From Octopus sinensis (lineage: Eukaryota): a stretch of DNA of 41,425 nt. Each line of letters opens with the position of its first letter. The stretch's first letter is position 1. Below the pieces are notes generated by a model. The model had not been told where the DNA came from. It made no database searches and saw nothing but the letters and a program-made list of their open reading frames with translations. The DNA lies in NCBI RefSeq assembly GCF_006345805.1, contig NW_021835442.1, forward strand, positions 1 to 41,425. Direction: 5' to 3'. A program made the translations under genes and the position numbers. Shown in pieces: positions 6,561 to 26,398 of this stretch.

Positions 6561-9500
6561 AAGGAAGGGGGGGAGGAGAGGGATGAAGGAGGAAAGAGGG
6601 AGAGGGGAGAGAGAAGAGAGAGAAGGGGGAGAGAGGGAGTGAGGGAGCAGAGGGGGGAAGGGGAAGAGGGAGGGAGAGAGAAGAGGGAAGAAGGGAAGGG
6701 GAGTAGGGGTGAAAGGATGAAGGACTGAAGAAGTAGGGGTCGGGGGAGGGTGAGGGGGGGTTAGATGAGGAGGGGGGAGAGTTGAGACCAAATGGCGTAT
6801 AAGAGCGAAGAGAGAAGATTAATTCCTGTTCACGGCGCAAACGGGAATCCGGATGGCCTCTGTGTAAGGACAAACCGAACACAGATAGGTGTTGCAAGGA
6901 GTGACCGGTGGAGCGGAAATGGCGTGAGACCGGTGTGTGTGTCGTTCGCAAGGTGGATGTCACGAAGGTGTTCCGCGAACCGGTCAGCCAAGCGGCGTCC
7001 CGTTTGTCCGATGTACAAGGAATTGCAGAGAGAGCAAGAGATGCAATAGATAATATTGCTGGAGGTGCAGGTGAAGGAGTGGATGATGGGATAGGGTCGA
7101 TGGTGGGTGCTAGTGAGGGGGTGGTGTTGGAGAGGTAAGGGCAAGTGCGGCAACGTGGGCGGGGCAGGGGAACGAGCCGGGTTGGGAGGTAGGGTCAGGG
7201 AAGGAGCTATGGACCAAAAGGTCTCGAAGGTTGTGGGCTCGTTTGAAAGAGGGGAGGGGTCGGTTAGGGAAGAGGTGTGAAGTGGACGGGTCGGACTGGA
7301 GATGACGGAAAGCTCGAAGAATGGTGCGTTGGAGACGTAGGGTCGTGGGGTGGTAAGTGAGGGGAAAAGGGAGGCGGGAGACTACAGGGGGGGTTCGGGG
7401 AGAGAGAGCAGATACACGGTCCACGGACCGTGCTCTGGCAAGGGCGGTGTGGATAGTGGTGGGGGGTATCCACGTAGGGTGAAGTGGTGAGCCATACGTT
7501 GAGACTGAGTCTCAAAGTCATGGTCGTCACTACAGAGCCTACGTAGACGGAGGAATTGGGAATAGGGGATGGAAAGCTTGGTGTGTGTTCTGGGTGGGAG
7601 GAAGAGAAGTTGAGGTATGAGTGTGAGTCTGTGTGTTTGTAGTGAATGGAGGTGGTAAGAGTGGAGTCAAGAATGCTAACCGAAATGTCGAGGAAGGAGA
7701 CAGAGGTGTTGGAGATAGTGGAAGTGAAGTGGAGGGCTGGATGGAAAGATTGGACGAAAGAGAGGAAGGAATCTAGATGTTCGCGGGAGAGTGAGGTGGC
7801 ACCGATAATGTCGTCAATATAACGACCATACAGTTCAGGAGTGGGACCAGTGAAATTAGAGAATATTTGGGCCTCAACATAGCCAACGAACAGGTTCGCA
7901 TAGTTGGGGCCCATTCGCGTTCCCATGGCCACTCCCGAGACCTGATGGTAGAACTCGCCCGCGAACGAGAAGCAGTTCAGAGTAAGGACAAGTTCGGCCA
8001 GACGAATGAGTGTGGAGGTGTCAGGTACAGGGTTAGAGCGGAGGTCAAGAAAGTGTCGAAGGGCCTGCAGTCCTTCGTGGTGAGGGATAACAGTATAGAG
8101 ACTTTGGATGTCCATAGTAAAAAGGATTTTGGAGGAGCCGGGAGGAAAGGAGAAAGAGTTGAAAAGCCGGAGAGCATGGTTGGTATCGTGGATGTGGGAG
8201 GGAAGAGATGCCACTAGGGGGGCAAGGACACGGTCGAGGTATTTAGAGATGAGCTCCGTGGGGCAGTTACAGGCGGAGACGATGGGGCGGCCAGGGTTGT
8301 TGGGTTTGTGGATTTTGGGGAGGAAGTAAATGGTGGGGGTACGTGGGGTTCGCACAATTAGGTTGGATGCGGTGCGGGGGAGACGGGAGGACGAGATGAG
8401 GTCTTGGACAGTAGAGGATACCGTCTGTTGGTAGCTACGTGTGGGGTTAGAGGGCAGAGGGGAATAGAAGGAGGTGTCATTGAGTTGGCGGAAAGCCTCG
8501 GCCTATAGAGGTCCGCGCGCCACACCACTACAGCTCCACCCTTGTCAGCCGGTTTGATGATAATGTCAGCGCGCCGTTGGAGGGAACGAAGAGCCAAGAG
8601 CTCAGCCGGGGAGATGTTGAGGCGGCGTTGGCGCCTGGAGAAGTTGAACCGCTCCAATGCACGCTGACAAGCGCCCGCGAAAAGATCCACTGCTAGGATC
8701 TGGCCAGGGGCAGGCGTCCACGGGGATGGTCGGCGGCCCAGGCCAGTGAAGCAGTCGTCCTCTTCGTTGGGTGTGGGTGGCGAGTCGTGTGGTAATGCGC
8801 ACCCAACCGGACACGGCGCACAAAGCTGTGGACATCAACTCGCGTCTGGAATTCCTTACAGGATGGAGTGAGGGGGATGAAACGCAGACCCCTACCAAGG
8901 ACGGAGCGTTCAGCCGCAGAGAGGGGAAGATCGGGGGGAATGGTAACAACAGACGGAAGTGGAGAAGGGGTGGGTGGAATAGAAGTAGGAGGGGTGGTAG
9001 GTCTCGTGGAGGTCTGAGGGGGGGGAGGGATTGGGGAGGTGTGTGGGGGGTGGTTGGGCGGGGCAGTAGGGTTAGGTGTAGGTGGATGGAGCCTAACGGG
9101 AGGGGAGAAGGGGTTGTAGGGAGGGGCAGTGGGGTTAGGTGTGGGTGGATGGAGCCTATCGGGAGGGGAGAAGGGTGGTGGAGGAGTTGGGGTAGTGGCG
9201 TCGGGTAGGGTGGAATGGAAGAGTGATTGGAGTTTACGAAGTTTGGTATCAGAAAGAAATTGATGGAAGAGTTGATTCAAATGGATAATGAAGCGTAGCG
9301 TGTTTGGAGCATAGAGAGGCGGCAGAGAGGAGAAGAAGGTGGAGAAAGCAGGAGGAAGAAGGCGGTTGATGGCATGTAGTTTGAGAGATTGGAGCGAATG
9401 GTGGCCCGCATAAGGCGGTAAGATGTGGTGCGGAGTATGGGTAAGATGGAAGAATCCGAGTGGAGAGCAGGGTGGAAGTGGAGGCGGAAACCTTTAGGGA

Positions 9501-9690
9501 TGAGTCGGTGATGTAGGCAGCGGCTTAGGAAAGAGACATGGCTAGAGAAGCGGGTTTTTTTAAAAAGAAGTAGAGAGAGATTAACGGACGGCTGAAGGCA
9601 ATATACAGGAAGCGAACGTAGATGATCCTTCAAACGGTGATGGAGGGTGAGGAGGTAGGACCTAGGATCCGGCATGATGGGATAGCGGAA
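6388..9690 (-). pseudogene. PLE polyprotein (N-terminal domain, Pro-rich linker, RT, GIY-YIG endonuclease), broken by several frameshifts
   Basis: ORF-track pieces 9277-9729, 8693-9280, 8358-8690, 7264-8355, 7110-7424, 6830-7153 and 6388-6963 give the expected motif order. Confidence 0.88.
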
Positions 9691-10299
9691 AAAAAACGTT
9701 CGAAAAAACAAAAAAAACAAAAAAAACAAAAATTATCGTATGAAAAAAATAGAAAAAAAGGATAGCGAAAAAAGGGGAAAAAACAAACGTTCAAAAAAAC
9801 AAAAAAATAATAATCGTATGAAAAAACTAGATAAGTAAGCGATAGGGGCAGAAAAGACGGGGCAAACGGAAAAGGGAAAGAAAGAAGGGAAGCAGAGAGA
9901 GGGGGAGGCAAAAAAAAGGGGGTGCAGGCAGAGGAAACGGAGTATGGACATCCAGAGAGGGAAGAAAGACGGAAAGGAGAACAAAAATTCAGGAAAATGT
10001 GGAAAGCATGAAATGAATGTAAAAAAAGTGGTAATATAAGAGAAAATAAAAATACAACAAACGGGACAGTTTATGCGAACAAGTTCAAGGTTGAAAGTTC
10101 AAGGTGAGAAATGTGTAGACGTCGTGGTATATTTTTTAAGGATTTCACATCAATGCAAAGTCACTTTGATCCGCGAAAGAGAGGTGCAGCCAATGGTAAG
10201 TATCCAAGAGGTAAAGAAAATCCAAGGTAGAGGTAAGTGTTGATAGTGGTATTGGTAGAATATAGGATGAAAGTGAGACCACGTGAGCGCATAATATAT

Positions 10300-11070
10300 A
10301 ACGGGAAGCTTTATGAAAATAAACAAAAGACGAAGGCAGGTGGAAAACAAACGAACAATTGTATTAGTATGGCGCTCAGGAAATATAAATAAAACAAGTC
10401 TTTAACGTTTCGAGCCTACGCTCTTCAACAGAAAGATACACAGAGAGAGAAAAACACAGAAAGAAGGAGAGAAAAAAAATGCGTGCAGTAGCTAACGAAT
10501 CAACATGGCGATCTGATTTCGGCCAGAGGTCAAAGATCAAACATGAGACGCGCGAGAGCGAAATAAGGGGGATAATAGGGTTGAGGGACCAGCTAAAAGT
10601 GCGTGGGAGGGGTCTGGATGTGTGTATGTATAGGGTTGGTGTATGTATTAGTATGTATAAGGGTGTGTGTGTGTGTGTGTGTATGAGAGAGTATTAGTGC
10701 GTAGGATTGGTCTGTCTGGACGTGCGTATGTATGGGGTGGGGTTTGTATTATTAGTATGTATTAGTATGTATTAGTACGTATTGGTATGTATAGGTGTGG
10801 TGTGTGTGTGTGAGAGAGTATAAGTGGGTATGCGGGGTCTGGACGTGTGTATGTATAGGGTTGGTGTAAGTATTAGTATGTACTAGTATGTATTAGTACG
10901 TATTAGTATGTATTAGTTGGTGTGTGTATTAGTATGGACATCATATGTGATGTGATGGTAAAGTCATGTGGTGTGTGTGTGTGGAGTGAGGAGAAGAAGA
11001 GGGGGAGGGGAGAAGAGGGGGGAGAAGGGGAGGGGAAGAAGAGGGGAGAGGGGAGGGGAAGGGAGGAGGA
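10300..11070 (-). repeat. 5' pseudo-LTR copy of the Poseidon-type PLE
   Basis: Direct repeat of 5752-~6560. The first ~140 bp appear identical; later differences are mostly indels in simple repeats. Confidence 0.9.
10399..10436 (-). ncRNA. Minimal type I hammerhead ribozyme in pLTR (copy 2)
   Basis: Identical to 5851-5888. Confidence 0.75.
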
Positions 11071-11194
11071 TATATATTATATATATATACGTATAATATA
11101 TATATACGTATATATGGTATATATATACGTATATATATATATAGTATTATGTATATATATACGTATATATATATATATAAATATATATGATAAA

Positions 11195-11237
<43 letters not shown>

Positions 11238-11250
11238 ATATACGTAATAT

Positions 11251-11288
<38 letters not shown>

Positions 11289-11461
11289 CGTATATATATA
11301 ATATCTATATATATAAATTATACGTATATATATATATATATTATATATATATAATATATACGTATATATATATATATAATATATCGTATATATATATATA
11401 CGTACATATATATATATATATACGTATATATATATATATTATATATATATATATATATACG

Positions 11462-11494
<33 letters not shown>
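11071..11494. repeat. Interrupted (TA)n array
   Basis: Direct reading. Confidence 0.95.
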
Positions 11495-11495
<1 letters not shown>

Positions 11496-13230
11496 TTGCC
11501 ACTTTACCAGCGGCCAAAGAGACAAAAATTGAGTACATCAACATCGAAGAAGATGATATCACACTAGCCATTGATGAGATTGACACAAACTCAGCTGCTG
11601 GACCTGATGGATTCCCAGCGATCCTTCTCAAATCGTGCAAACGAGCCCTTGCAAAACCGCTACAGCTTCTTTTTCAGAGCTTTCTTGCAAGTGGTAAGCT
11701 CCCAGTCAAACTGAAAGAGGGCTAATATGCCCTATCCATAAGGGAGGTAGCATAGCAGATGCTAAAACTTATAGGCCTATCTCTCTGACCTCACACATTA
11801 GCAAAGTCATGGAACGAATAGTCCGTAAGAAACTAATCATGTTCCTTGAAGAAAATGACTTACTGTCTGACACCCAGCATGGATTTCGACCAGGTAGAGG
11901 CTGCCTAACACAGCTCCTGCAACACTATGACTGGGTGTTGAAACAGCTACTAAATGGCTCAAATGTGGATGTAATATATCTCGACTTTGCAAAAGCCTTT
12001 GATAAAGTCGACCATGGTATGATCTGTCACAAACTGCGTGGTCTCGGCATAGGCGGGAAACTTGGAGAGTGGCTGCACAACTTCCTAAAAGACAGAAAAC
12101 AGGCAGTTGTGAGCAATGGAGCCACCTCCAAGGAAACGCAAATAACAAGCGGTGTCCCACAGGGCACTGTCTTTGGGCCACTGATGTTCATAGTGGCCCT
12201 TTCAGACATGCCTTCAGTTGCTACGATGACCACCCTTGCTAGCTATGCAGATGACACAAAAGTCTCCCACGCAATACAAAACCCTGAAAATATTGCGCAT
12301 CTGCAACATGAGCTGGACACAATATACAGGTGGGCTGAGGACAACAACATGCAGTTTAATGCAGGTAAGTTCCAGGCCCTGCGCTACTGGCACACAAAGG
12401 TAAATGACGTGAAGACTGGATACACTGGCCCAGGAAGAATTGCAATCCCTGAGTCAAAATCAGTGCGTGACCTGGGCATTGACATGAGCAATGATGCATC
12501 TTTCCAAATGCATATTGCTAATCTGGTGATAAAATGCAGACGGCTAGCTGGATGGATTCTCCGAACTTTCAGAACAAGAGAGAAGGAGACACTGATGGTC
12601 CTATGGAAAACATTTGTCCTCAGCCGCTTGGACTACTGCTCCCAACTTTGGTCACCACACAATATAAAACAAACAGCAGAACTCGAAGCAACTCAGAGAA
12701 GCTACACAAAGAAAATCGTCTCAATGCAAAATGTCAGCTACTGGGAAAGACTGAAGTTATTAAACCTCTTCTCCCTGGAGCGGAGGCGGGAGAGATATGC
12801 AGTGATATACATCTGGAAAATCCTGGAGGGTCTTGTCCCAAACTTCAAAGTTACTCCAACCGCAGAACGGGGCGCCGCTGCGTGGTGCCAAGGATTCCAA
12901 CATCACCATCAAAATACAGGTCCAGATACTGCAACAGCTTGGGTTTCAGAGGACCACAGCTCTTTAACATCCTCCCTAAATGCCTGAGAGACTTACATGG
13001 TGTGGATGTGGGTTTCTTTAAAACTAAACTGGATCTCTTCTTGTTGGGATACCCAGATGAACCTATCTCACGACAGGAGACACGGATGCGGGCAGCAGCA
13101 TCGAACTCCCTTGTTGATCAAGTGCCACGTATCAGAGGTGGATTCACAAACTAGTGTAGCTCATTCAGCGGTGGTGCCCCAGCATGGCCGCGGCCTTCGG
13201 GCTAAAACATTTTTAAGGATTTAAGGATTT
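11495..13230 (+). mobile_element. 5'-truncated CR1-group LINE (family C), RT and 3' end
   Basis: [47 protein letters not shown]; at least two frameshifts. Tail GGTGCCCCAGCATGGCCGCGGCCTTCGGGCTAAAAC + (TTTAAGGA)n. Confidence 0.92.
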
Positions 13231-13263
13231 ATATATATACGTATATATGTATATATATATACG

Positions 13264-13816: not shown

Positions 13817-13852
<36 letters not shown>

Positions 13853-14363
13853 GTATATATATATATATATATACGTATATAAGCGAATATAAGTGAAAGT
13901 ACAACAAGTCACTGTATTTGAGAAGAATATTTTCGCTTTTGATATAGTATTTTGCAACTAGAACATACTCGCGAATACACGTGTTAAAACGCACGTGTGT
14001 TACTTTCCCGAAATCGAAGTGAATTTTATTCTTCGTCTGTGAATCAACAAGACACAGGATATTTTCGTTTTTGATGTATATCTGCGTGTTCTGAAAAAAG
14101 CCTCTGAAAAATTTGCTGCTTAATACCAAATCGCTTAGGAAAATACAGAAAGTATTCCTCAAACTGTTGCATGTGCTAAATCGAAACTCAAATCCCTTTT
14201 GTTTACAAAGTGCGCTTAAGGAATATAAAAGGTCTGTCTTGTCAATCTATCTTCCTTTCTCATAAAAAGGAATCGCGTAAGTACTCTCTCAGCCGGTAAG
14301 GTAAGGAAGATATTATTTATTTTGTTATCATTAGTGTTCTTTCAAACAGAAAATAATAATATA

Positions 14364-14629
14364 TCTATGTGTATGTATATGTGTGTGTTAGAAGTATAGT
14401 CGCAATTAGTTTTTATTTTAGAAGACATTGTCTGTAGCGACGGACAAATATATATTTTCTTTTCTCTTTTTCTCTGCTTAAATTCTGTAAAATCTCTATG
14501 TGTATGTATATGTGTGTGTTAAAAGTATAGTCGCAATTAGTTTTTTATTTTAGAAGACATTGTCTGTAGCGACGGACAAATACATATTTTCTTTCCTCTT
14601 TTTCTCTGCTTAAATTCTGTAAAATCTCT
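14364..14629 (+). repeat. Two-copy tandem repeat (~131 bp) in the LINE D 5' region
   Basis: TCTATGTGTATG...AAATTCTGTAAAATCTCT starts at 14364 and again at 14495. Confidence 0.9.
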
Positions 14630-15415
14630 TGGATTGTTTTCTTTCAGCTATTTCATTATTATTATTATTGTTTCTTTATATACTCACTTGGTACTACTGT
14701 TTACATATGAGAGATGGAAACAGGAAACACCAACCACAGAGTGTCAAAAAATGACATGCCCACTGCCACAGTCGAAGAAGGCAATATATGTGCATGTGCA
14801 CACATGTGTATATGTGTGTATATGTATGTATACGCGTGTATGTGTGTGTACAAATAGCTTCGCTTAGAATTCTCCCCCCTCTCTCTCTCTGTCTGTCTCT
14901 TCAGTTCTCTCCCTCACGCTTCTCCTTGTCTCTTCATAACTCTCATTCTATCTTACTCCCCTTTTTCAAATATATAAATTCTCTCTATATTTCTTCCTTC
15001 TCTCCCTATCTCTTCAGTTTCTCTCCCGCTTCTCCTTGTCTCTCCATTACTCTCTTCTATCTCTTCAGTTTCTCTCCCGCTTCTCCTTGTCTCTCCATTA
15101 CTCTCTTCTAACTTACTCTCCTCTCTCGGATACATATAAGGACATAGACGCTTTCTCTCTCTTCCTTCAGCTCTCAGTCTCTCCTCTTCCTCTTCTCTCT
15201 TACTCTCGGCTCCCAATTTCTCCTTAAGTACATAGACGCTCCCTTTCTCTACTTCCTCCCTACCCCCTATTGCACTATTAGATTAATATAAATTAATATA
15301 ATATAATTAATATAATATAATATAATATAATTCCTCCCTTCCTCACAATCTCTTCTTCTCTCCTCCCTTCTCCCTTTTTCCTCACAGCTTCTCTCTCTCT
15401 CCCCGCTACAACGGA

Positions 15416-16367
15416 ATGGACAACATGCAAAAATTAGAGGTGAATGCAAACACTGGCGTCAACAAAAGCCAGCGTAACTGGACGAAAGTAGAGCTGGAAG
15501 TTTTCATCAGAGGATGGAGCTCGGCCGACAGATCGCAACCAACTAAAAACATAGCGGCGACCCTGAAAAGCCATGGCTTTATGAGGACGTTGGCGCAAGT
15601 AGAGAGGAAGAAAAGAGAAGTCGAAAGGGCCTACACTCTCATTGCACCACACATGGCTTTGCTAAGCCAAGTCCTCAAGGTGGACAAAGACAAAGAGAGA
15701 GAGATGGAAACAGGAAACACCAACCACAGAGTGTCAAAAAATGACACGCCCACTGCCACAGTCGAAGAAGGCAAGCAGGGCAAACAACAGATAGGCGGCG
15801 ATGGGGAAACGGAAAATAACCACCCGGATGAAAATACCTATGCAGAAAGGAACCAGTGGACAACCGTCCAACGGAGGAAGAAAAAACAGAGGAACTGGGG
15901 ACAAGAAAACCCAGATAACATGCAAATTCTTCCGGAATGGAACCTGCTGGCATGGAGAAACAGGGGAAGGATGCAGTGTCGCTCATCCCAGGCCCTATGG
16001 AAATTGCATCAAACCCACTCGACCAAAATGCCTTAACCAAAACCAAGACCGAAACCAAAACCAGAACAAATACAAGCTGCCCCAGAAATATGCAGACATA
16101 GTGCGTAATGCCCCAACAAGGAGAAGGCGCACATTTGCAGAGGAAATGCAGACGGCGGCAGCAGAACAAAGAAATTTTGTGGAAATAGCAGAGAAAATTG
16201 TGGGACAACTGGCCTGGATACATCGTCTTCAGAGCCAGGGGCACTCACAACAGCACTCAAGACCACCACAATCAAGGGACCCAGGGTGGCCACCGCTGAC
16301 ACCAGCCCAGGTGCCACACCGTCAGACTTTATTGACACCCCAAATATCTCACCAGTGCTTCTGCTGA
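15416..16367 (+). pseudogene. LINE D ORF1: Myb/SANT(trihelix)-like N-terminus + C-x7-C-x8-C-x3-H zinc finger; one frameshift near 15885
   Basis: WTKVELEVFIRGW..IAATLKSHGFMRTLAQVERKK..Y; CKFFRNGTCWHGETGEGCSVAH (15921-15986); YADIVR and AAAEQ..F..A.KIV.QL.W.H, also present in family B. Confidence 0.75.
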
Positions 16368-19307
16368 ATGTCAGAGGTCTGGTGAAACCCACTAATATGA
16401 GTAAAATTCCTTACCTTAGGGACTTAAGCACAAGCAACCATGCAATATGCATAGCGCTGACTGAAACGCACCTGTCAAGCAGTATAGCAGATGCAGAAAT
16501 ACACATACCAAAGTATACTGTTTTTCGGTCAGACAGGAAGGAAAAAACTCATGGTGGGGTTGCCCTGTACGTCCGTGAAGATGTCACACCCATAGTACTG
16601 TTGACACACTCAAACTCAGTCTGTGACACACTGATAGTACACATGAAACAACCGAAAATAGTAATATGTGTCACATATCGGCCACCAGACACCCCTAGTC
16701 ATGAAGGAGTGTTTGAAGATAGCCTCAGAAGAATAGAAGAAGTCCTGGACAAACTGGACCAGGGTAACACCATTCTACTGCTGGGAGATTTTAACCTTCC
16801 GAAAGTCAAATGGCCAGATGGCCATCTCCTCCCTGGAATGACATCACTTGAACAGAGACAGACAGAGTCCTTGTTGGCTCTCACACGCAAGTTTTTCATG
16901 GAGCAAGCTGTGCTTCGGCCAACAAGAGGTGAGAATGTCTTGGACCTCTGTTTCACAAGCAACCCGATGCTCATCCACAACATAATGGTAACACCAACAA
17001 TTCTCTCAGATCACAACTTAGTAGAGGTAATGATATATGGTATGAGAGAGTTAGTTGAGACGCAGCCATTAGAAAATACCACAGGCCTATCCAGTCTAAA
17101 CTTCCATAAGGCAAACTGGAAGAAGATCAACGAAGAGATCCGAAAACATGACTGGAGTGACTTCATCACCACACAAGACACCAACACACATTTCCAACAT
17201 TTCATGACAACAATACAGAACATATGCCATAAGTTTGTCCCGGAGAGAAAAGCCAGTGGGCATAGGAACGTTATTCCCAGAGACAGGAAAATACTTATGA
17301 GGCGAAGAGCTAAGCTCTCGAAGCAACTGAATGCACGGCAGAGAAACAATGAGGGACTCCACCTGAAACTTTTTGAAACGGAAACTGCACTCAAACTTTC
17401 CTATGAGAAGGAGGGGGCAGAGAGAGAAGCCAGGGCCATAGAGAATATTAAAACAAACCCTAAAGCCTTCTTTAAATTTGCGAAAGAAACCACCTCGGTA
17501 CACTGCAAGATTGGCCCACTCTTTGATAAAAAGGGCTCTCTAACTGAGGACCCCCAAGGGATAAGTGAAATACTAAAGGAACAGTATAAAAGTGTGTTCA
17601 CATCCCCTCTGGGGCACATGCAAATCACAAACCCAGAAGTTTTCTTTGATGCCACAACACTCCAAAACCAAACAACAACCATCGACCACATAGACATAAC
17701 AGAGAGGGATGTAATATCTGCCATAGAAGAAATGAGAATAAACTCAGCTGCTGGACCAGATTGATTCCCAGCAGTTCTCCTAAAAGCATGCAGGCATACC
17801 CTAGCGGGACCACTGAAGAAGCTCTTCAGTGGTTCCTTGGCTAACGGTAAACTGCCCAGGGCGCTAAAAGAAGGCACCATATGCCCTATCCACAAAGGAG
17901 GGAGTAGAGTAGAGGCCAAAAACTACAGGCCAGTCTCCCTGACGTCACACATAAGTAAGGTCATGGAACGAATCATCAGAAAAAAACTGATCACGTTCCT
18001 CGAAGAAACTAACCGTCTCACTGACACACAGCATGGCTTTCGCCCAGGAAGAAGCTGCCTTACGCAGCTGTTACAACACTACGACTGGGTACTGAAACAA
18101 CTACTGGATCGCTCACAGGTGGATGTGGTATATCTCGACTTTGCGAAGGCCTTTGACAAAGTCGACCACGGAGTGATATGTCACAAATTACTCAGACTCG
18201 GCATAACAAGAAAAGTAGGTGAGTGGATACATGACTTCCTGAAGGACAGAAGCCAGATGGTTGCAGCCAATGGAGCCCTCTCGGGAAAGACACCAATAGC
18301 AAGCGGAGTGCCACAGGGCACAGTCTTGGGACCCTTGCTGTTTTTGGTGGCGCTCTATGACATGCCCTTGGTAGCACAAACAACATCCCTCACTAGCTAT
18401 GCTGATGACACAAAGGTAGCACAGGCAGTCAAAAACCCAGCTGATGCTGACCTTTTACAACAAGATCTGGATGCCATATACAAATGGGCTGAAGACTACA
18501 ACATGCAATTTAATGCTGGTAAATTTCAAGCCTTACAATATCAAGCTGTAAACACATATACATTACAACACAACTATACTGGTCCAGGAGGGATCGAAAT
18601 CCCAGTATCGAAATCAATACGGGACCTGGGGATAGACATGAGTGACGATGCATCTTTTTCTTCACACATCGCGAAGGTGGCGACAATGTGCAGACGACTC
18701 ACTGCTGGATCCTGAGGACATTCCGGACAAGAGACTGCGAGACCATGTTGACACTATGGAGGACATTTGTCCTAAGCCGCCTGGACTAACTGCTCCCAAC
18801 TGTGGTCACCGCATAGTGTCAAACTAATCACAGAGCTTGAGACAATCCAAAGACATTTCACCAAGAGGATTTCCACCATGAAAGAAAAGAACTATTGGGA
18901 GAGGCTTAGGGAACTCAATTTGTACTCCTTGGAACGAAGACGAGAGAGATATGCAGTGATATACATATGGAAAATCCTGGAGGGACTAGCACCAAATTTT
19001 GGAATTGAGAGCTGTTCCAATCCCCGTACAGGACGTCACTGTGTGGTGCCAAAGGTCCCGTCTTCCACATCCAGGGTAAGGAGCAGATACTGTAATAGCC
19101 TGGGGTTCACGGCCCTCAGCTGTTCAACAAACTGCCAAGAAAACAAAGAGATCTACATGATGCGGATGTGGACATTTTCAAAAACATCTAGACAAGCTGC
19201 TTTCCGGGATCCCAGATGAACCCACTGCAAGGTACGAAGGTAACCTAAGGGCAGCAGCTACAAACTCTCTCTTAGATCAGTGGCCAGCCACGGCAAACTG
19301 GACTTAG
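16355..19307 (+). pseudogene. LINE D ORF2 (APE endonuclease + reverse transcriptase), disrupted
   Basis: LLLNVRGL, ALTETHL, GGVALYV, YRPP, GDFNLP, LDLCFT, SDHN; [43 protein letters not shown]. Nonsense codon at 17762-17764 and frameshifts after about 18700. Confidence 0.92.
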
Positions 19308-19381
19308 AGAGGGTAGCAACAAGGGCGGTGCCCCAGCATGGCCTCAGCCGGATGGCTGAAACAAGTAAAAGAGTAAAAGAG

Positions 19382-19383
<2 letters not shown>

Positions 19384-19414
<31 letters not shown>

Positions 19415-19441
19415 ATATATATATATAATACGTATATATAT

Positions 19442-19475
<34 letters not shown>

Positions 19476-19494
19476 CGTACATATATATATATCC

Positions 19495-19534
<40 letters not shown>

Positions 19535-19654
19535 GTATATATTTATATATTATAGATATATAGATATATACGTACATATATATATATCCGTATATATATA
19601 TATATATAATATATATATATACGTATATATTTATATATATAGATATATATATCG

Positions 19655-19685
<31 letters not shown>

Positions 19686-19691
19686 TTACGT

Positions 19692-19726
<35 letters not shown>

Positions 19727-19930
19727 CGTATATATATATATATACGTATATATATATATATCTATATATATCAATATATACGTTATATATATATATCTAT
19801 ATATATAAATATATACGTATATATATATATATACAGATATATATATATGTACGTATATATATATATATCATACGTATATATATATATATTATATACGTAT
19901 ATATATATAACGTATATATATATATACGTA

Positions 19931-19970
<40 letters not shown>

Positions 19971-20072
19971 GTATATATATATACGTATATATATATATAT
20001 ACGTATATATATATATATATATTATATATATATATATATATAAATATATACGTATATATATATATATATACG

Positions 20073-20106
<34 letters not shown>

Positions 20107-20159
20107 GTATATATATATTATATATAATATATACGTATATATATATATATATATAGACG

Positions 20160-20191
<32 letters not shown>

Positions 20192-20277
20192 TATATAGAT
20201 ATACGTATTGTATATATACGTTATATTATATACGTATATATAATATATATATACTATATATATCTTATCTATTATAT

Positions 20278-20308
<31 letters not shown>

Positions 20309-20350
20309 GGTATATCTTATATATATATATATATATACATATATATTATA

Positions 20351-20389
<39 letters not shown>

Positions 20390-20424
20390 CATATATATAT
20401 ATATATCATATCTATATCTATATC

Positions 20425-20455
<31 letters not shown>

Positions 20456-20516
20456 CCATACATATATATATAATATAATAACATCTATATATATACATGC
20501 ATATATATACATCTAC

Positions 20517-20567
<51 letters not shown>

Positions 20568-20652
20568 CATATATATATATACATATATATTACATGTATA
20601 TATATACATACATATATATATATCATATATATATATACATATATATATATAC

Positions 20653-20722
<70 letters not shown>

Positions 20723-20736
20723 ATATATATATATAC

Positions 20737-20767
<31 letters not shown>

Positions 20768-20879
20768 CATATATTATACATATATATATAATATATAATA
20801 TATACATATATATATACATATATATACATATATATTACAATATATATATATATACATATACGTATATATATATACACAC

Positions 20880-20912
<33 letters not shown>

Positions 20913-20965
20913 ATATTGATATATATATATATATATATACATACACGTATATATCTATATATATA
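19384..20965. repeat. Interrupted (TA)n array between the two convergent LINEs
   Basis: Direct reading. Confidence 0.95.
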
Positions 20966-21055
20966 TTGATTGATTGATTGATTGATTCTAGTTTCAGCTT
21001 ATGAGCTGTGGCCATGCTGGGGCACCGCCATTTGGTGTTGCTACTTGGTTTTACT

Positions 21056-24007
21056 TCACGAAAGATTTTTAGCAACTGCTATTTGGTGCATGAGAGAGTT
21101 CGATGCAGCTGCCCTCATCTGCACCTCCTGCCGTGAAGTTGGTTCATCTGGGACACCTGACAGGAAGAGATCCAGTTTCATTTTAAAGACATCTGCATCC
21201 ACCCCATGCAGGTCTCTCAGGTTCTTCGGGAGGATATTGAAGAGCTGTGGGCCACGGAAGCCCAGGCTATCACAGAATCTTGTCCTACATCTTGATGGCT
21301 AACTTGGAGTTCTAGGCACCACGCAGTGGCGCCCAGTTCTGGCATTTGCGTAACTCTCGATGCCAAAGTTTAGGACACGTCCCTCCAGGATCTTCCAGAT
21401 GTATATTATGGCATATCTTTCCCGCCTACGCTCCAAGGAATATAGTTTTAATCTCTTGAGTCTTTCCCAGTAGCTTACATTCTGCATAGTGGCTATCTTC
21501 TTCGTGTAGCTGCGTTGGATCGCCTCGAGCTCTGTGATCAACTTGACACTGGATGGTGACCATAACTGAGAGCAGTAGCCAAAGTGGCTTAGGACAAGTG
21601 TCCTCCAGAGGACCATCATGGTTTCTTGTTCTCTTGTCCTAAAGGTTCTGAGGTTCCATCCGGCCAGTCGTCTACATTTCATTGCCAATTTAGCAACATG
21701 TACACGAAAGGTTGCGTCATCACTCATGTAAATACCCAGGTCACGCACTGATTGTGTCTCTGGGATTGCTATTCCTCCGGGTCCAGTGTATTCATTGGGT
21801 ATTGCATTTAGTTTTGCATGCTGATAGTATAAAGCTTGAAACTTTTCAGCATTGAACTGCATGCTATTCTTTTCAGCTCACTTGTATATTTTGTCCAGCT
21901 CACATTGCAGGCGTTTAGTGTCTTCAGGGTTCTGTAGTGCCTGTGAAACTTTTGTATCATCTGCATAACTTGTGATCGTGGCTCTCTGCGTGGCTGAGGG
22001 CATGTCTGAGAGGGCCATTATGAACAGTAGTGGTCCCAAAACAGTGCCCTGCGGAACACCGCTCACTATTTGCGTGTTAATGGAAGTGGCCCCATTGGCT
22101 ACTACCACCTGACTTCTATCTTTCAGAAAGTCATGGAGCCATTCTCCCAGTTTTCCACCTATGTTGAGATCACGCCGTTTGTGACATATCATTCCATGAT
22201 CGACTTTATCAAAGGCCTTTGCAAAGTCGAGATATATCACTTCCACATCTGAGTGGTTGAGCTGCCGTTTCAAAACCCAGTCATAGTGCTGCAGGAGCTG
22301 AGTTAAACAGCTTCTCCCTGGTCGGAAACCATGGGTGTCGGGCAGCAAGTCATTCTCTTCAAGGAAGGTGATCAGTTTCCTTCTGACTATTCGTTCCATG
22401 ACCTTGCTGATGTGTGAGGTGAGAGAGATAGGTCTGTAGTTCTTGGCCTCCGCTCTGCTACCTCCTTTATAAATGGGGCATATTTTACCTTCCTTCAGTT
22501 TTCTTGGAAGTTTGCCAGCTGCAAGGAAGCTCTGAAAGATTAACTGCAGTTGTCTTGCTAGGACTCTCTTACATGCTTTTAGGAGGATTGCCGGGAATCC
22601 ATCGGGGCCAGTAGCTGAGTCTGTTTTCATTTCATCTATAGCCTTGATTACATCGTCTTCCTTTATATCGATGTAATTTATCGTCGCCGCCTCTGATTTT
22701 ATATCTGCAGTGGTAAAGAAGTCAGTTGGATTGGTGATTTGGAGATGCCCAAGGGGTGGAGTGAAAACACTCTTGAATTGCTCATTCAGTATTTCACTTA
22801 CCCTCATTGGTTTTCCTGTAAGTGTGCCATCCTTTTCAAGGAGTGGCCCTATTCTACAGTGTAAAGTAGCTGTTTCTTTGGCATACCTGTAGAAAGCTCT
22901 GGGGTTAGATTTTATGTTGTCTATAGCCCAGGCTTCTTTGTCTGCTCTTTCCTTTTCATGGGAGAGTTGCAGACAGTTTTCAATTTCCAACAGTTTTATT
23001 TTTAGGCGGGACTTTTCACTGCTTTCAATCTGTTTGTTTAGGCGATTTGAACTTTTTGTACGCCGTCTCATTAAAATTTTCCTCTCTCTGGGGATTTTGA
23101 TCTTGTGTACAGTGGCCTTTCTCTCTGGGACACATTTGTAGCATATGGCTTGTATTACAGACATGAATTGCTGAAGTTTCACGTCGATGTCTGGCGAGGA
23201 GAGACATTTAGGTCAGTTTTCTTTGAGGATCTCTTTCTCAATTTGTTTCCAGTTTGCCTTATGGTAGTTCAAGCTGGAAAGATTCTGAGGGTTTCTTGTA
23301 GGCTGCATGTCCGTGCTCTCTTTTGGCCCGTACATGGTCAGCTCTACCATGCTGTGATCCGAGAGTAGTGTCACTTTCACATTATGGATGGGATCCATGT
23401 CATTTGTGAAGCAGAGATCCAGTGTGTTACCTGCCCTGGTTGATTGGAGTATTACTTGCTCCATGTACAGGGTGTTGATGAGGTTCAGGAGGGACCTCGC
23501 CTGTCCTCGTTCACATCTTGTCATTCCTGGGAGAGAAAGGCCCTCGGGCCATCTGACATTGTGTAGATTGAAGTCTCCCATAAGAAGTACACTTATGTGT
23601 TGTTCTAATGTGATTAGAACTTCTTCTATTTTTATAAGGCAGTCTTCAAACTTGCCCACATGGCTTGGGGCATCTGGAGGACGATATCTAGCACACACAA
23701 CTACATCAAGTTGCTTTATATGTACAATTAGTGTGTCACACACCGAGTTTGAGTATGACAAAAGGTCCTGGGGTGTGAGGTCCTCCCGGATGTACATAGC
23801 AACTCCTCCATGACTCCTTTCTTTTCTGTCGGTCCGTAGTACAACATACTGTGGTATGTGTAATTCGGCATCTGCTATGTCCGGTTTCAGGTGCGTTTCC
23901 GTGAGTGCTATGCATAAGGCTTGATTGCATGCAACAAAGTCTCTCAAGAACGGGATTTTTGTCCTGTTACTGAGTGTTTGCAGTCCTCTGATGTTCAGTA
24001 GGAGCAT
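21056..24007 (-). pseudogene. LINE B ORF2 (APE + RT), disrupted
   Basis: MLLLNIRGL, ALTETHL, GDFNL, LDLCFT, SDH; [43 protein letters not shown]. Split across track ORFs 23213-24043, 21878-23182 and 21299-21862. Confidence 0.92.
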
Positions 24008-24971
24008 CGAGGTGAGGTGTATGCTGTTGCCGGCGGTGTCCACCTTGGGTCAGTTTGCAGTGGTGGTCTTGTATACTGTGGGTAGTCCCATCTGCGAGCT
24101 TGGGTTTGATGAAGCCAGGTTAGCTGCTGTACAATCTTTCTTTTGTGCCATGCATTGTGAACTGTGGGTAGTCCCATCTGCGAGCTTGAGTTTGATGGAG
24201 CCAGGTTAGCTGCGGTACAATCTTTTGTGCCATGCTCAAAAAAGATTCTTGTTCAGCAGCTGCCCTTTCAACAACACGTTGGCGGTTTGTGGCACGCACG
24301 ACATCTGCGTACCTCCACTTTGGGGCAGGTGGTGCGTGGTCCATCGCTTTTCCTTTCGGTGGTTGGTTTCTGCGACAGGGTCCCGGATGTGCAAAACGGC
24401 AGCCTGCACCTTCCTCTCCATGCCAGCAGGCACCTCTCAGGTAGAACCTACACACCCGTGTGCGCTGCTTGTTTCCATCCTTTTTGGTATATGGATAGTT
24501 AGGTTTGCTTCTATCCTTGGCTGTTTCGTTTTTTGGTTTTCCCTGAGTTTTAGTTTTAGTTTTTCCTCCTTTTTTGGTTCTTTCATATCCATGTCCATGG
24601 CTTTTGGTGCTGGTAGGAGGACCCGCACTTGGGTTTACCTCCCGGGCAGGTTTCTCACTGGAGTTTTCTTCCTGGGCGTCTACCAGGTGGGGGTGACCTT
24701 TTTCATCAGCGCCCGCGTCTCCATCCTTGCCATCTTTACTTTATTCGCTTCGTTCGCTCTCAAAGATGGCATCCAGCGTGTTAATGTGCGATCTGATAAG
24801 TGCGTAGGAGCGTATAAATTCTTGCTTCTTCCGCTCTATTTGAGCTGACGTCCTTTTGTATCCGCTGCTCATCAGCGCAGCCGTAATTATGTTATTCGGA
24901 TTTTCTCCGTCAGCGCACCGCCATCCTCTCAGGAACAACGCCAATTCGTCACTTTTCCAGGTTCTGGACAT
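23995..24971 (-). pseudogene. LINE B ORF1 (Myb/SANT-like + CCCH), disrupted
   Basis: MSRTWKSDELALFLRGW..ITAALMSSGYKRTSAQIERKK..Y; CRFYLRGACWHGEEGAGCRFAH (~24387-24452); an 86-bp-period duplication at 24075-24235 breaks the frame. Confidence 0.75.
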
Positions 24972-25036: not shown

Positions 25037-25728
25037 AATATATTAATTTATATTAATCTAATAGTGCAATAGGGGGTAGGGAAGAAATAGAGAAAGAGAG
25101 CGTCTATGTACTTAAGGAGAGATTGAAAGAAGAGAGTAAGCCGAAAGAAGAGAGTAAGAAAGAAGAGGAAGAGGAGAGACTGAGAGCTGAAGGAAGAGAG
25201 AGAAAGCGTCTATGTACTTAAAGAGAGATTGAAAGCTGAAAGAAGAGAGGAGAGATTGAGAGCTGAAAGAGGAGAGTAAGAAAGAAGAGAGTAATGAAGA
25301 GACAAGGAGGTGCGTGAGGGAGAGAACTGAAGAGACAGAGAGAGAAGGAAGAAATAGAGAAAGAATATATATATCTCTCCGCAGAAAATTTCTAAACGAA
25401 ACTAATTGTACACACACATACACATATGCATACACATATATATACATACATATACACATATACACACGTGTGCACATATATAAACAAGAATAACAAATAA
25501 GTATATAAAGAAAAAAAGAGCTAAAAAACGGAAGCCAAGAGATTATTACAGACAATTTCTAAACGAAACTAATTGCACACACACATATACATATGTATAC
25601 ACACACATACACACATATGTATACATATATATATAACAAGCCAAGAGATTATTACAGAATATAAACAGAGAAAAAGAAGATATGTATCTGTAAACAGAAT
25701 TAACGATATATATATATATATATATATA

Positions 25729-25920
25729 TTAACGATAGATTATTACGATAGAATTACAGAATTAACGATAGAATTAACGATATATATATATATATTAACG
25801 ATAGATTATTACGATAGAATTACAGAATTAACGATAGAATTAACGATATATATATATATATTAACGATAGATTATTACGATAGAATTACAGAATTAACGA
25901 TAGAATTAACGATATATATA
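25729..25920. repeat. Three-copy 66-bp tandem repeat in the LINE B 5' region
   Basis: TTAACGATAGATTATTACGATAGAATTACAG starts at 25729, 25795 and 25861. Confidence 0.92.
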
Positions 25921-26387
25921 TGTATATAAACGATAGATTTTTACAGAATGTAAACAGATCTTACATTGATTTACGGGTAAATGAATTAATGTAAAAAGGG
26001 TACTTATCTGATAAAAGGTATACGTATTAAAGTAAAAATGGTACTTATCTTATAAAAGGTATACGAAGAGGTTTTTTCAATGAAAGAAAAGAAAAACGGT
26101 TCTTTTTGCTGTTAGAGTCGACTGGAAATAAATTTAGAAGATTTCACCACGTGCTAACTTCGACAGAGGAAAATCTGGCGTGCGTTATTGAACTTAAGTG
26201 TACAAACTTGACTTGTAGCAGAATATATTGCGGTTTTTAACCAAAATATCCACGTACACGTCTATAAGTTAACAATTTCTACGTTTTTTATGAGTTTTCG
26301 CCTATTATTTCGTCGATTTATGCAAACCTTCTTGTTTTTTTATCACAGAGCAAAGCAACACGTGTTTACTCTACGAAGCCGGAAGTC

Positions 26388-26398
26388 ATATATATATG

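What the first reader, a model, noticed from the sequence alone, without database searches (positions are those of the whole stretch)
15416..16367. LINE ORF1 with Myb/SANT(trihelix)-like domain plus CCCH zinc finger, conserved in two diverged families
Seen: family D has WTKVELEVFIRGW..IAATLKSHGFMRTLAQVERKK..Y. Family B (24971-23995, -) has WKSDELALFLRGW..ITAALMSSGYKRTSAQIERKK..Y. Both then have an exact C-x7-C-x8-C-x3-H finger with the WHGE.G.G spacer, a YAD(I/V)VR motif and AAAEQ..F..A.KIV.QL.W.H, while the linkers do not align. Established: CR1/L2/Jockey-group ORF1s typically carry RRM+CCHC, PHD, Tnp22-like or esterase domains, and Myb domains are known from R2-type single ORFs. Inference: a DNA-binding plus RNA-binding ORF1 that I do not recognise from described LINEs. 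It could self-regulate the long 5' UTR or steer insertion to (TA)n.
Basis: partly seen in the sequence, partly recalled or inferred. Interest (0 to 1): 0.8.

Follow-up and report, generated by a model that had tools for sequence, protein, structure and literature searches.

The report
Octopus LINE ORF1: Myb-like plus CCCH
Two broken copies of an octopus jumping gene (a LINE retrotransposon) encode a first protein with an unusual build, a small three-helix Myb/SANT-like domain followed by one RNA-type CCCH zinc finger. This is a real, conserved variant of LINE ORF1 that I could not find described, and what it does is untested.

Summary
Every quoted motif is present in both copies, and the two ORF1s are significantly similar (tblastn E 1e-16 and 1e-18). 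Both are broken: D by a 1-nt frameshift near 15890, B by a stop at 24743-24741 and an 86-bp duplication.

The window is Octopus-like. Intact relatives of 289-318 aa exist, one beside a near-complete APE+RT ORF2 on an O. vulgaris chromosome.

The N-terminal domain folds confidently as three helices (pLDDT 87). Its best structural matches are Myb-type DNA-binding domains. It hits only Pfam Myb_DNA-bind_4, and always below the curated cut-off (best 24.1 versus 27 bits). I call it Myb/SANT-like by fold and probable remote homology; Pfam membership is not shown.

The C-x7-C-x8-C-x3-H finger is a genuine CCCH type, close to the MBNL1 fingers. It is not unique: PHD-type ORF1s of related LINEs in other animals share it (hhalign 97.8%). 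The simplest reading is an N-terminal module swap, PHD to Myb-like.

All copies here are flanked by (TA)n on both sides, which supports (TA)n-specific insertion. Nothing shows that ORF1 causes this.

Verdict: new variant of a known kind, moderate interest. Repbase and Dfam could not be checked.

The parts
14357..15415 (+). Family D 5'UTR: 132-bp monomers x2.1 (14357-14629), a TG/TA-rich stretch, a CT-rich region and a (TAATA)n run
   Evidence: TRF. The stretches 14784-15300 are 72-78% identical at the DNA level to B's 5'UTR at 25481-25039.
15416..16367 (+). Family D ORF1, read in two frames (15416-~15890, then ~15890-16367) and broken by a 1-nt deletion near 15890
   Evidence: The in-frame junction ...RRKKKQRGTGDKK... 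is seen in O. vulgaris protein P0001.
15476..15682 (+). D ORF1 N-terminal basic three-helix Myb/SANT-like domain (helices at about residues 24-36, 42-52 and 59-91)
   Evidence: AF2 pLDDT 87.1. Foldseek top matches are Myb-type DNA-binding domains. Pfam PF13837 gives E 8.6e-4 for D and 4.8e-5 for the family consensus, both below GA 27. pI 10.3.
15683..15920 (+). Low-complexity linker, basic just before the finger. It does not align with family B and contains the frameshift.
   Evidence: Alignment A1. AF2 pLDDT is below 50.
15921..15986 (+). D ORF1 CCCH zinc finger, C-x7-C-x8-C-x3-H
   Evidence: The family profile hits MBNL1 CCCH fingers at E 1.2e-4. hhalign against PHD-type ORF1 fingers gives 97.8%.
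16089..16106 (+). YADIVR motif
   Evidence: It is conserved or duplicated in relatives as YADAV / ADAV.
16155..16223 (+). Conserved helix AAAEQxxFxxxAxKIVxQLxWxH
   Evidence: AF2 predicts a helix, but at low confidence.
16254..16364 (+). ORF1 C-terminal His/Gln/Pro tail with RPPQ...WPP. The ORF2 frame (-1) overlaps it from 16286.
   Evidence: The same -1 overlap occurs in L001, L002 and L006.
16286..19219 (+). Family D ORF2: APE 16286-17764, RT 17837-18715, C-terminal part 18878-19219. It is split over several frames.
   Evidence: Pfam Exo_endo_phos_2 at 4e-13 and RVT_1 at 1.2e-31.
19313..19381 (+). D 3' end: conserved motif GGTGCCCCAGCATGGCC within two small hairpins, then (GTAAAAGA)2
19382..20966 (.). 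(TA)n array on which the 3' ends of D (+) and B (-) converge
   Evidence: TRF and sequence.
21299..24043 (-). Family B ORF2 (APE + RT)
   Evidence: It is 56-70% aa identical to D ORF2.
23998..24971 (-). Family B ORF1, with an in-frame stop at 24743-24741 and an 86-bp tandem duplication (24069-24139 / 24155-24225) that shifts the frame before the tail
24756..24962 (-). B ORF1 Myb/SANT-like domain
   Evidence: Pfam PF13837 E 0.025. 40% identical to D.
24387..24452 (-). B ORF1 CCCH finger
   Evidence: Pfam zf-CCCH 21.4 bits, above GA 20.5.
24195..24311 (-). B ORF1 YADVVR motif (24311-24294) and conserved helix (24263-24195)
25039..25481 (-). B 5'UTR segment homologous to D's 5'UTR
   Evidence: blastn 72-78% identity.

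Best explanation
This is the ORF1 protein of an octopus lineage of APE-type LINEs from the CR1/L2 (Jockey-superfamily) group. From N- to C-terminus the protein has five parts:
1. a basic domain of about 70 residues with three helices, of the Myb/SANT-like (trihelix / Myb_DNA-bind_4-like) kind;
2. a fast-evolving disordered linker that becomes basic just before the finger;
3. one CCCH zinc finger with the unusual spacing C-x7-C-x8-C-x3-H;
4. a YAD(A/I/V)V motif and a conserved amphipathic helix;
5. a Pro/Gln/His tail that the -1-frame start of ORF2 overlaps.

Shown: the architecture, its conservation across at least six diverged families including intact copies, its position next to ORF2, and the homology of its finger to the finger of PHD-type ORF1s in related LINEs.

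Inferred: the finger, basic linker and helix form the RNA-binding, RNP-forming core common to this group of ORF1s. The N-terminal module is exchangeable, and in the octopus lineage a Myb/SANT-like domain sits where relatives carry a PHD finger. PHD fingers read histone tails and Myb/SANT domains bind DNA or histones. The N-module therefore most likely tethers the RNP to chromatin or DNA. The (TA)n tracts into which these elements insert are one candidate ligand.

The two copies in the window are dead. D has a frameshift; B has a stop and an 86-bp duplication.
For: ORF1 identity:
- It lies upstream of, and overlaps, an APE+RT ORF2 in D and B, in contigs L001 and L002, and in the O. vulgaris locus L006.
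- In L006 the ORF1 is intact at 318 aa, followed by a 916-aa ORF2 with APE and RT.

Family:
- An exhaustive HMMER search gave 56 hits. They include the full-length relatives P0003, P0008 and P0002; P0057, a cluster member of hit P0007, has the same block order.

N-domain:
- AF2 with 21 sequences gives pLDDT 87.1 and three helices.
- The Foldseek PDB matches with low rmsd are the Myb domains of PHR1, LUX and ARR1, the GT-1 trihelix and the CoREST SANT domain (TM 0.45-0.58 on the query, rmsd 2.4-3.6 A).
- PF13837 is the only Pfam family hit repeatedly: 11 of 21 members, best E 1e-4. The family consensus scores 24.1 bits at E 4.8e-5, with classical Myb as the second hit.
- pI is 9-10 in most members.

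Finger:
- Pfam zf-CCCH scores 21.4 bits in B, above GA 20.5.
- The family profile hits MBNL1 and MBNL2 fingers at E 1.2e-4.

Module sharing:
- Weaker hits are proteins with a PHD-like N-terminus and the same finger.
- Three of them sit directly upstream of APE+RT ORF2s. Their RT cores are 45-51% identical to D.
- hhalign of the two ORF1 profiles gives 97.8% and E 1.1e-12 over the finger.

Element type:
- The 3' end has two small conserved hairpins plus 4-8-nt tandem repeats and no poly(A).
Against: - No Myb-family hit reaches Pfam's curated threshold.
- Foldseek E-values are 0.29 or worse, as expected for a 60-residue helical domain, so convergence on a common three-helix fold is not excluded.
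- An HMM search of PDB sequences with the N-domain profile found nothing meaningful.
- Outside the N-domain the structure model is unreliable. The finger fold and the helix are therefore sequence-level inferences.
- The profile-profile match to PHD-type ORF1s covers only the finger (39 columns). Homology of the whole C-terminal half is not shown.
- No nucleic-acid binding has been measured.
- The RT clade (CR1, L2 or L2-2/Daphne) was not determined.
- Known members are Octopus vulgaris, O. sinensis and unidentified read sets, so the taxonomic depth of the family is unknown.
Confidence: 0.6

Rival explanations
1. The N-terminal domain is a three-helix bundle that only resembles Myb/SANT. It would act as a protein-protein or oligomerisation module, like the N-terminal and coiled-coil parts of L1 ORF1p, or bind the element's own RNA. 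It would not contact DNA or chromatin.
For: - All Myb-family scores are below threshold.
- Foldseek E-values are 0.29 or worse, and calmodulin lobes and other helical proteins appear in the same list.
- The third helix is unusually long, about 33 residues.
- ORF1 proteins in general are RNA chaperones that multimerise (established knowledge; PMC4120745).
Against: - PF13837 is the only Pfam family that recurs (11 of 21 members), and classical Myb is the runner-up for the consensus.
- Every low-rmsd structural match is a Myb-type DNA-binding or SANT domain.
- The domain is basic.
- The signature G(F/Y)xR(T/S)xxQ(I/V)xxKKxx(F/L)xxxY matches the recognition-helix region of Myb_DNA-bind_4. I judged this by eye.
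Confidence: 0.25
2. The (TA)n specificity of these elements is set entirely by ORF2: the cleavage preference of the endonuclease plus priming on TA-rich DNA. The Myb-like domain of ORF1 would have an unrelated role, such as nuclear import, binding of the 5'UTR or promoter, or countering a host repressor. The last would fit its rapid evolution.
For: - In the APE-type LINEs studied so far, target choice is set mainly by the endonuclease (R1, TRAS, L1; established knowledge, recalled from memory).
- ORF1 is the fastest-diverging segment between D and B, while the 5'UTR and ORF2 stay 78% and 69% identical. That pattern is typical of host-conflict or module exchange.
Against: Nothing here excludes it. 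The only counter-hint is weak. Three related PHD-type LINE contigs contain no (TA) run of 6 or more units, whereas every Myb-type copy examined is flanked by (TA)n.
Confidence: 0.45
3. The N-terminal block is not a real part of ORF1. It would be a captured host exon or a chance ORF in front of a shorter, finger-only ORF1.
For: Both copies in the window are broken, and the linker is low-complexity.
Against: - The same N-domain, linker, finger, helix and tail occur in one continuous ORF in P0057, P0003, P0008 and P0002.
- This includes a chromosomal copy with an adjacent ORF2.
- The N-domain is the best-conserved block of the protein.
- No non-LINE protein matched the N-domain at E below 1e-3 among 1.84 billion representatives.
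Confidence: 0.03

Closest known systems
PHD-type (type III / 'type V with PHD') ORF1 of CR1- and L2-lineage LINEs (Khazina & Weichenrieder 2009; Metcalfe & Casane 2014, PMC4120745)
   Same: - It is a separate ORF1 directly upstream of an APE+RT ORF2.
- The RT cores are 45-51% identical to family D.
- It has the same C-x7-C-x8-C-x3-H finger, CxF(Y/F)xxGxCxHGxxGxxCxFxHP (hhalign 97.8%).
- A downstream '(S/N)FL' helix looks similar by eye.
   Different: - The N-terminal module is a PHD finger there and a cysteine-free three-helix Myb/SANT-like domain here.
- The PHD-type proteins carry several further CCCH-like fingers after the first. The octopus ORF1 has one.
- The published descriptions read here (PMC4120745) list no CCCH finger.
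Myb domains of R2 (N-terminal ZF+Myb of the single ORF) and the Myb-like domain in ORF2 of the telomere-specific TRAS1
   Same: A Myb-type three-helix domain encoded by a non-LTR retrotransposon. In those elements it binds the target DNA (established knowledge, recalled from memory).
   Different: - Those domains are part of the RT-bearing protein, not a separate ORF1.
- R2 uses a restriction-like endonuclease.
- Those are classical Myb repeats, whereas this domain scores best with PF13837.
Myb/SANT-like (trihelix-type) accessory protein of PIF/Harbinger DNA transposons and its domesticated relatives (e.g. NAIF1)
   Same: A mobile element encodes a small Myb/SANT-like protein separate from its catalytic protein. 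There the protein brings the enzyme to DNA (established knowledge, recalled from memory).
   Different: That is a DNA transposon with no RNA intermediate and no CCCH finger. No sequence match to such proteins was found here.
Muscleblind-like (MBNL1/2) CCCH zinc fingers
   Same: These are the best solved-structure matches to the finger profile (E 1.2e-4). The core CxxxxRGxCxxGxxxCRFAHP is shared. MBNL fingers bind single-stranded RNA (established knowledge).
   Different: The MBNL fingers have a loop of 6 (or 4) residues between the second and third Cys, against 8 here. They occur in tandem pairs; here there is a single finger.

Membership tests
LINE ORF1 of the CR1/L2 (Jockey-superfamily) group | A separate ORF immediately 5' of, and on the same strand as, an ORF2 encoding an APE endonuclease and a reverse transcriptase | tested here: met
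   D and B, L001 and L002, L006.
LINE ORF1 of the CR1/L2 (Jockey-superfamily) group | A 3' end without poly(A): a hairpin-containing 3'UTR ending in short tandem repeats | tested here: met
   Two small conserved hairpins, each with one compensatory pair, followed by (GTAAAAGA)2, (AATC)n or (TTTAAGGA)2.
LINE ORF1 of the CR1/L2 (Jockey-superfamily) group | The RT domain groups with CR1/L2-group references in a phylogeny (RTclass1 or Repbase) | not testable with these tools
   No reference RT set, Repbase or Dfam was available. The only data are 45-51% RT identity to other two-ORF APE LINEs with PHD-type ORF1.
Pfam Myb_DNA-bind_4 (PF13837, Myb/SANT-like, trihelix type) | A score at or above Pfam's gathering threshold (27 bits) | tested here: not met
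   D 16.6-20.1 bits, B 15.4 bits, family consensus 24.1 bits at E 4.8e-5. 11 of 21 members hit at E of 1 or less.
Pfam Myb_DNA-bind_4 (PF13837, Myb/SANT-like, trihelix type) | A three-helix Myb/SANT fold | tested here: inconclusive
   The AF2 model is confident (pLDDT 87.1) with three helices. The best low-rmsd Foldseek matches are the Myb domains of PHR1, LUX and ARR1, GT-1 and the CoREST SANT domain, but E is 0.29 or worse.
Pfam Myb_DNA-bind_4 (PF13837, Myb/SANT-like, trihelix type) | Binds DNA | not testable with these tools
   Only indirect evidence: the domain is basic, with pI 9-10 in most members.
CCCH zinc finger (Pfam zf-CCCH, PF00642) | Three Cys and one His in CCCH order, with a score at or above the gathering threshold (20.5 bits) | tested here: met
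   B scores 21.4 bits. The consensus scores 20.3 and P0057 18.6, just below threshold; D alone has no hit. The family profile hits MBNL1 fingers at E 1.2e-4. The C-x8-C middle spacing is longer than the usual 4-6 residues.
Type III (PHD) ORF1 | An N-terminal PHD finger (Cys4-His-Cys3) | tested here: not met
   The N-domain has no Cys/His ligand pattern and no PHD hit. The relatives P0026 and P0041 do hit PHD models weakly.
Type I (RRM+CCHC), type II (Tnp22) and type IV (esterase) ORF1 | Presence of an RRM with a CCHC knuckle, a Transposase_22 domain, or an SGNH esterase domain | tested here: not met
   No such Pfam hit at E of 10 or less in either copy or in intact relatives at E of 0.01 or less.
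R2 / TRAS-type Myb target-binding domain | The Myb domain is part of the RT-bearing polypeptide | tested here: not met
   Here the domain is at the N-terminus of ORF1, about 270 codons upstream of ORF2 and in another frame.

The most novel reading that the evidence does not exclude
The Myb/SANT-like domain of ORF1 is the target selector. It would bind (TA)n duplex DNA and deliver the RNP to TA microsatellites. That would make this an APE-type LINE whose site specificity is encoded in ORF1 and was acquired by swapping a chromatin-reading PHD module for a DNA-binding module.
Probability: 0.15. Interest if true: 0.75.

Novelty: new variant of a known kind. Interest (0 to 1): 0.5.

Why it matters
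LINE ORF1 proteins are known to be modular, but the list of modules described for the CR1/L2/Jockey group is short: RRM, CCHC, PHD, Tnp22, esterase and coiled coil. A Myb/SANT-like module in the position where relatives carry a PHD finger would add a new type. It would also suggest that the N-terminal slot of these ORF1s is a chromatin- or DNA-contact module that lineages exchange.

These octopus elements sit in (TA)n on both flanks. That gives a concrete, testable system for asking whether ORF1 can contribute to target choice in APE-type LINEs.

Two practical points follow. The shared C-x7-C-x8-C-x3-H finger is absent from the ORF1 classification I read, so it may be an under-annotated ORF1 marker. 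Octopus genome annotations also currently carry these ORF1s as unnamed hypothetical proteins.

Tried and rejected
- **Word-indexed protein searches.** Three searches returned only a handful of Octopus proteins and no named relatives. The exhaustive HMMER search supplied the family.
- **PDB sequence search with the N-domain profile.** It gave only ribosomal protein S8 at E 0.07, which I treated as noise.
- **Full-length AF2 model from a two-sequence alignment.** It was unreliable outside residues 20-80. I used it only to locate the N-domain.
- **Literature searches.** I looked for any LINE ORF1 with a Myb-like, SANT or CCCH domain and read three ORF1 or CR1 surveys. None describes this architecture. 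The octopus LINE paper (PMC9115989) concerns a single-ORF RTE element with a C2H2 finger, which is a different element.
- **Source organism of run SRR22824287.** This run yielded the two most divergent intact ORF1s, but its organism could not be identified.
- **Programmed -1 frameshift at the ORF1/ORF2 overlap.** I saw no canonical X XXY YYZ heptamer by eye in 16286-16367 and dropped the idea.
- **(TA)n as the element's own tail.** Rejected, because family-specific 4-8-nt repeats lie between the 3'UTR and the (TA)n. In addition, 5'-truncated copies abut (TA)n at their 5' junction as well.
- **Recollection about Daphne-clade LINEs.** I recall that these may prefer (TA)n targets but could not verify it. 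It remains a lead only.
Full report
**1. What is in the sequence**

The region 15416-16367 (+) lies directly upstream of an ORF2 that encodes an AP-endonuclease and a reverse transcriptase. Pfam gives Exo_endo_phos_2 at 4e-13 and RVT_1 at 1.2e-31. A second element on the - strand has the same layout, with ORF1 at 24971-23998 and ORF2 at 24043-21299.

The block order is the same in both copies:
- an N-terminal W..EL..F.RGW ... G(F/Y).RT.AQ(I/V)ERKK...Y block;
- a linker that does not align;
- a finger with exact C-x7-C-x8-C-x3-H spacing and a WHGExGxG loop;
- YAD(I/V)VR;
- AAAEQ..F...A.KIV.QL.W.H.

The similarity is not chance. tblastn of D against B gives E 1.7e-16 (40% identity) for the N-domain and E 1.5e-18 (39%) for the C-terminal half.

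Both copies are dead:
- D changes frame near 15890. This is a 1-nt deletion relative to the in-frame junction seen in Octopus vulgaris protein P0001.
- B has a stop at 24743-24741.
- B also has an 86-bp tandem duplication. It shifts the frame just before the conserved C-terminal tail, which can still be read at 24075-23998.

**2. Source and relatives**

The closest database protein is from Octopus vulgaris (97% identity), so the window comes from an octopus genome.

An exhaustive HMMER search of 1.84 billion representative proteins with the D+B profile found 56 hits. The strong hits are the same family:
- full-length proteins P0003 (289 aa), P0008 (291 aa) and P0002 (371 aa);
- P0057 (318 aa, O. 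vulgaris), a 90%-identity cluster member of hit P0007 that surfaced;
- many N-terminal fragments, including an O. sinensis RefSeq protein.

All full-length members keep the same order of blocks, and all but one also keep a tail with RPPQ...WPP.

These ORF1s are linked to LINE ORF2s:
- The P0003 contig continues into an APE sequence about 60% identical to D and B.
- The P0008 contig shows the start of ORF2 in the -1 frame.
- The chromosomal locus of P0057 (L006, OX597829.1) has an intact 318-aa ORF1 overlapping a 916-aa ORF2 with APE and RT.

Intact versions of this ORF1 therefore exist, and the N-terminal block is a genuine part of it.

**3. The N-terminal domain**

- With a 21-sequence alignment, AlphaFold2 gives a confident model (mean pLDDT 87.1, pTM 0.71). 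It has three helices at D residues of about 24-36, 42-52 and 59-91.
- Foldseek against the PDB finds no statistically significant match (best E 0.29), as expected for so small a helical domain.
- The matches with low rmsd are all Myb-type domains: PHR1 (probability 0.98), LUX ARRHYTHMO, ARR1, the GT-1 trihelix domain and the CoREST SANT domain. TM-scores normalised to the target are 0.28-0.72 (0.28 for the long CoREST complex chain, 0.48-0.72 for the other four) and rmsd is 2.4-3.6 A.
- In Pfam, Myb_DNA-bind_4 (PF13837) is the only family hit repeatedly: 11 of 21 members, best E 1e-4.
- The family consensus reaches 24.1 bits (E 4.8e-5), with classical Myb_DNA-binding as the runner-up. All scores are below the curated cut-off of 27 bits.
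- An HMM search of PDB sequences found nothing.
- The domain is basic, with pI 9-10 in most members. That fits nucleic-acid-binding Myb domains better than acidic SANT domains.

My reading is a Myb/SANT-like fold and probable remote homology to the trihelix/PF13837 class. Formal membership is not shown and DNA binding is not tested.

**4. The finger and the C-terminal half**

- Pfam zf-CCCH is above threshold in B (21.4 versus 20.5 bits). It is just below threshold for the consensus and for P0057.
- A profile of the C-terminal half hits the RNA-binding CCCH fingers of MBNL1/2 at E 1.2e-4.
- The weaker hits of the exhaustive search are more informative. They are proteins with a PHD-like N-terminus followed by the same finger, CxF(Y/F)xxGxCxHGxxGxxCxFxHP, and then further CCCH-like fingers.
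- Three of them were looked up. Each lies directly upstream of an APE+RT ORF2, and the RT cores are 45-51% identical to D.
- Others are multicopy 'C3H1-type domain-containing' proteins of porcelain crabs.
- Profile-profile comparison of the octopus ORF1 family with these PHD-type ORF1s gives 97.8% probability and E 1.1e-12. The match covers only the 39 columns of the finger.

The finger is thus a shared module of ORF1s in this LINE group. What is peculiar to the octopus family is the N-terminal module.

**5. Comparison with what is described**

The survey of Jockey-superfamily ORF1s lists PHD, RRM, CCHC, Tnp22, esterase, coiled coil and a zf/lz motif (PMC4120745, Table 1). It mentions no Myb, SANT or CCCH. 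It also stresses modular, reticulate ORF1 evolution, which fits a PHD-to-Myb-like exchange.

Other sources read here did not describe this architecture either:
- A 2026 survey of vertebrate CR1-group elements reports only esterase-type or unidentifiable ORF1s (PMC13343379).
- The octopus brain LINE paper describes a single-ORF RTE element (PMC9115989).
- Full-text searches for a Myb-like or CCCH LINE ORF1 found nothing relevant.

Myb domains are known in R2 and in TRAS ORF2. Myb/SANT-like accessory proteins are known in PIF/Harbinger transposons. Both statements are from memory and were not tested here.

Repbase and Dfam could not be consulted. The element itself may therefore already be catalogued.

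**6. Element context and the (TA)n idea**

The 3' ends of four copies share the motif GGTGCCCCAGCATGGCC (4 exact matches and 1 diverged match, against 0.02 expected). The motif lies within two small hairpins and is followed by a family-specific repeat: (GTAAAAGA)2, (AATC)n or (TTTAAGGA)2. There is no poly(A). This is the CR1/L2 style of 3' end.

Beyond that tail every copy abuts (TA)n, and (TA)n also lies at the 5' junctions examined:
- The 5'-truncated copies starting at about 245 and at 11498 begin within about 3 bp of (AT)n arrays.
- The copy ending at about 4200 (-) is about 77 bp from an (AT)n array on its 5' side.
- D and B converge on the 1.6-kb (TA)n at 19382-20966 and have (TA)n upstream of their 5'UTRs.
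- The independent locus L006 shows the same pattern.

The window itself is TA-rich (9% in perfect runs), but the junction precision argues for insertion into (TA)n. Whether ORF1 has any part in this is open. The endonuclease could account for it alone. The only hint of a link is weak: three PHD-type relatives carry no (TA) run of 6 or more units in their contigs.

**7. Evolutionary pattern**

Between D and B the 5'UTR is 78% identical over 354 bp and ORF2 is 68.6% identical over 2.9 kb. ORF1 gives no blastn match at all.

ORF1 is therefore either evolving much faster than its neighbours, with only the domain cores held, or it has been exchanged between lineages. Either way, 'conserved in two diverged families' holds only for the domain blocks.

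**8. Verdict**

The architecture is best seen as a new variant of the modular CR1/L2-group ORF1: a Myb/SANT-like N-module on a shared CCCH core.

The mechanism remains inference:
- RNA binding through the finger, linker and helix.
- Chromatin or DNA contact through the N-module.
- A role in (TA)n targeting, which is speculative (about 15%).

Noticed in passing
window 15-242, 4277-5436, 11070-11495, 13231-13262, 13818-13881, 19382-20966, 26388-28158; L006 5843-5911 and ~12004-12050: Every copy of this LINE group is flanked by (TA)n on both sides. Two 5'-truncated copies start within about 3 bp of an (AT)n array. This points to site-specific insertion into TA microsatellites.
   Followed up: partly
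window 14970-15300 vs 25374-25039; 16356-19271 vs 24006-21092: D and B are 78% identical in the 5'UTR and 68.6% in ORF2, but show no DNA-level similarity across ORF1. ORF1 is either the fastest-evolving segment or has been swapped.
   Followed up: partly
window 16286-16367; L001 ~800-890; L002 ~850-975; L006 8804-8957: ORF2 is open in the -1 frame and overlaps the conserved Pro/Gln/His tail of ORF1 in every copy examined. No canonical slippery heptamer was seen by eye, so how ORF2 is translated is unexplained.
   Followed up: partly
window 558-574, 13173-13189, 19327-19343 (+), 21010-21026 (-), diverged copy at 36408-36424: A conserved 3'UTR motif, GGTGCCCCAGCATGGCC, lies within two small hairpins. 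It is followed by a family-specific 4-8-nt tandem repeat, (GTAAAAGA)2, (AATC)n or (TTTAAGGA)2. This is likely the RT recognition end.
   Followed up: partly
window 14711-14782: A 72-bp piece encoding D ORF1 residues 96-119 (23 of 24 residues identical) sits inside D's own 5'UTR, just upstream of the TG/TA-rich stretch. It is a local rearrangement or the remnant of another copy.
   Followed up: no
window 14357-14629 and 25689-25958: Both D and B carry a 132-bp tandem repeat (x2.1) at the far 5' end of a 5'UTR longer than 1 kb. This recalls the promoter monomers of mouse L1. The two 132-bp units share only a block of about 45 bp.
   Followed up: no
window 28164-29186 and 29294-30316 (-): There are two tandem copies of the same internal ORF2 segment (end of the linker plus the first 181 RT residues). 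On the 3' side they are cut off directly at the (AT)n array 26388-28158.
   Followed up: no
window 2339-4084 (-): A 581-aa ORF is a chimera. The first part is this LINE group's ORF2, up to RT residue ~78. It then continues into an unrelated sequence (...SLYPSIDVDFAVEKC...), apparently another retroelement.
   Followed up: no
window 6100-9730 (-): A G-rich strand (GC skew about +0.5) holds a different RT-bearing ORF at 7264-8355 (RVT_1 2e-8; YFLPKIHK...PGRPIVS). Neighbouring proline-rich ORFs and 63-126-bp tandem repeats point to another retroelement type.
   Followed up: no
window 33829-34770 (+) and 39310-39649: A third, distant LINE-like RT ORF (about 25% identical to D) lies at 33829-34770. 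Separately, a 55/110-bp tandem repeat has a unit that reads like an endonuclease 'GDFNGH' motif region.
   Followed up: no
proteins P0031 and P0041 (loci such as L004): Some PHD-type ORF1s of related LINEs begin with a leader ending in G(V/I)E(S/P)HPGP. This resembles 2A-like ribosome-skipping peptides reported in invertebrate LINEs (from memory).
   Followed up: no
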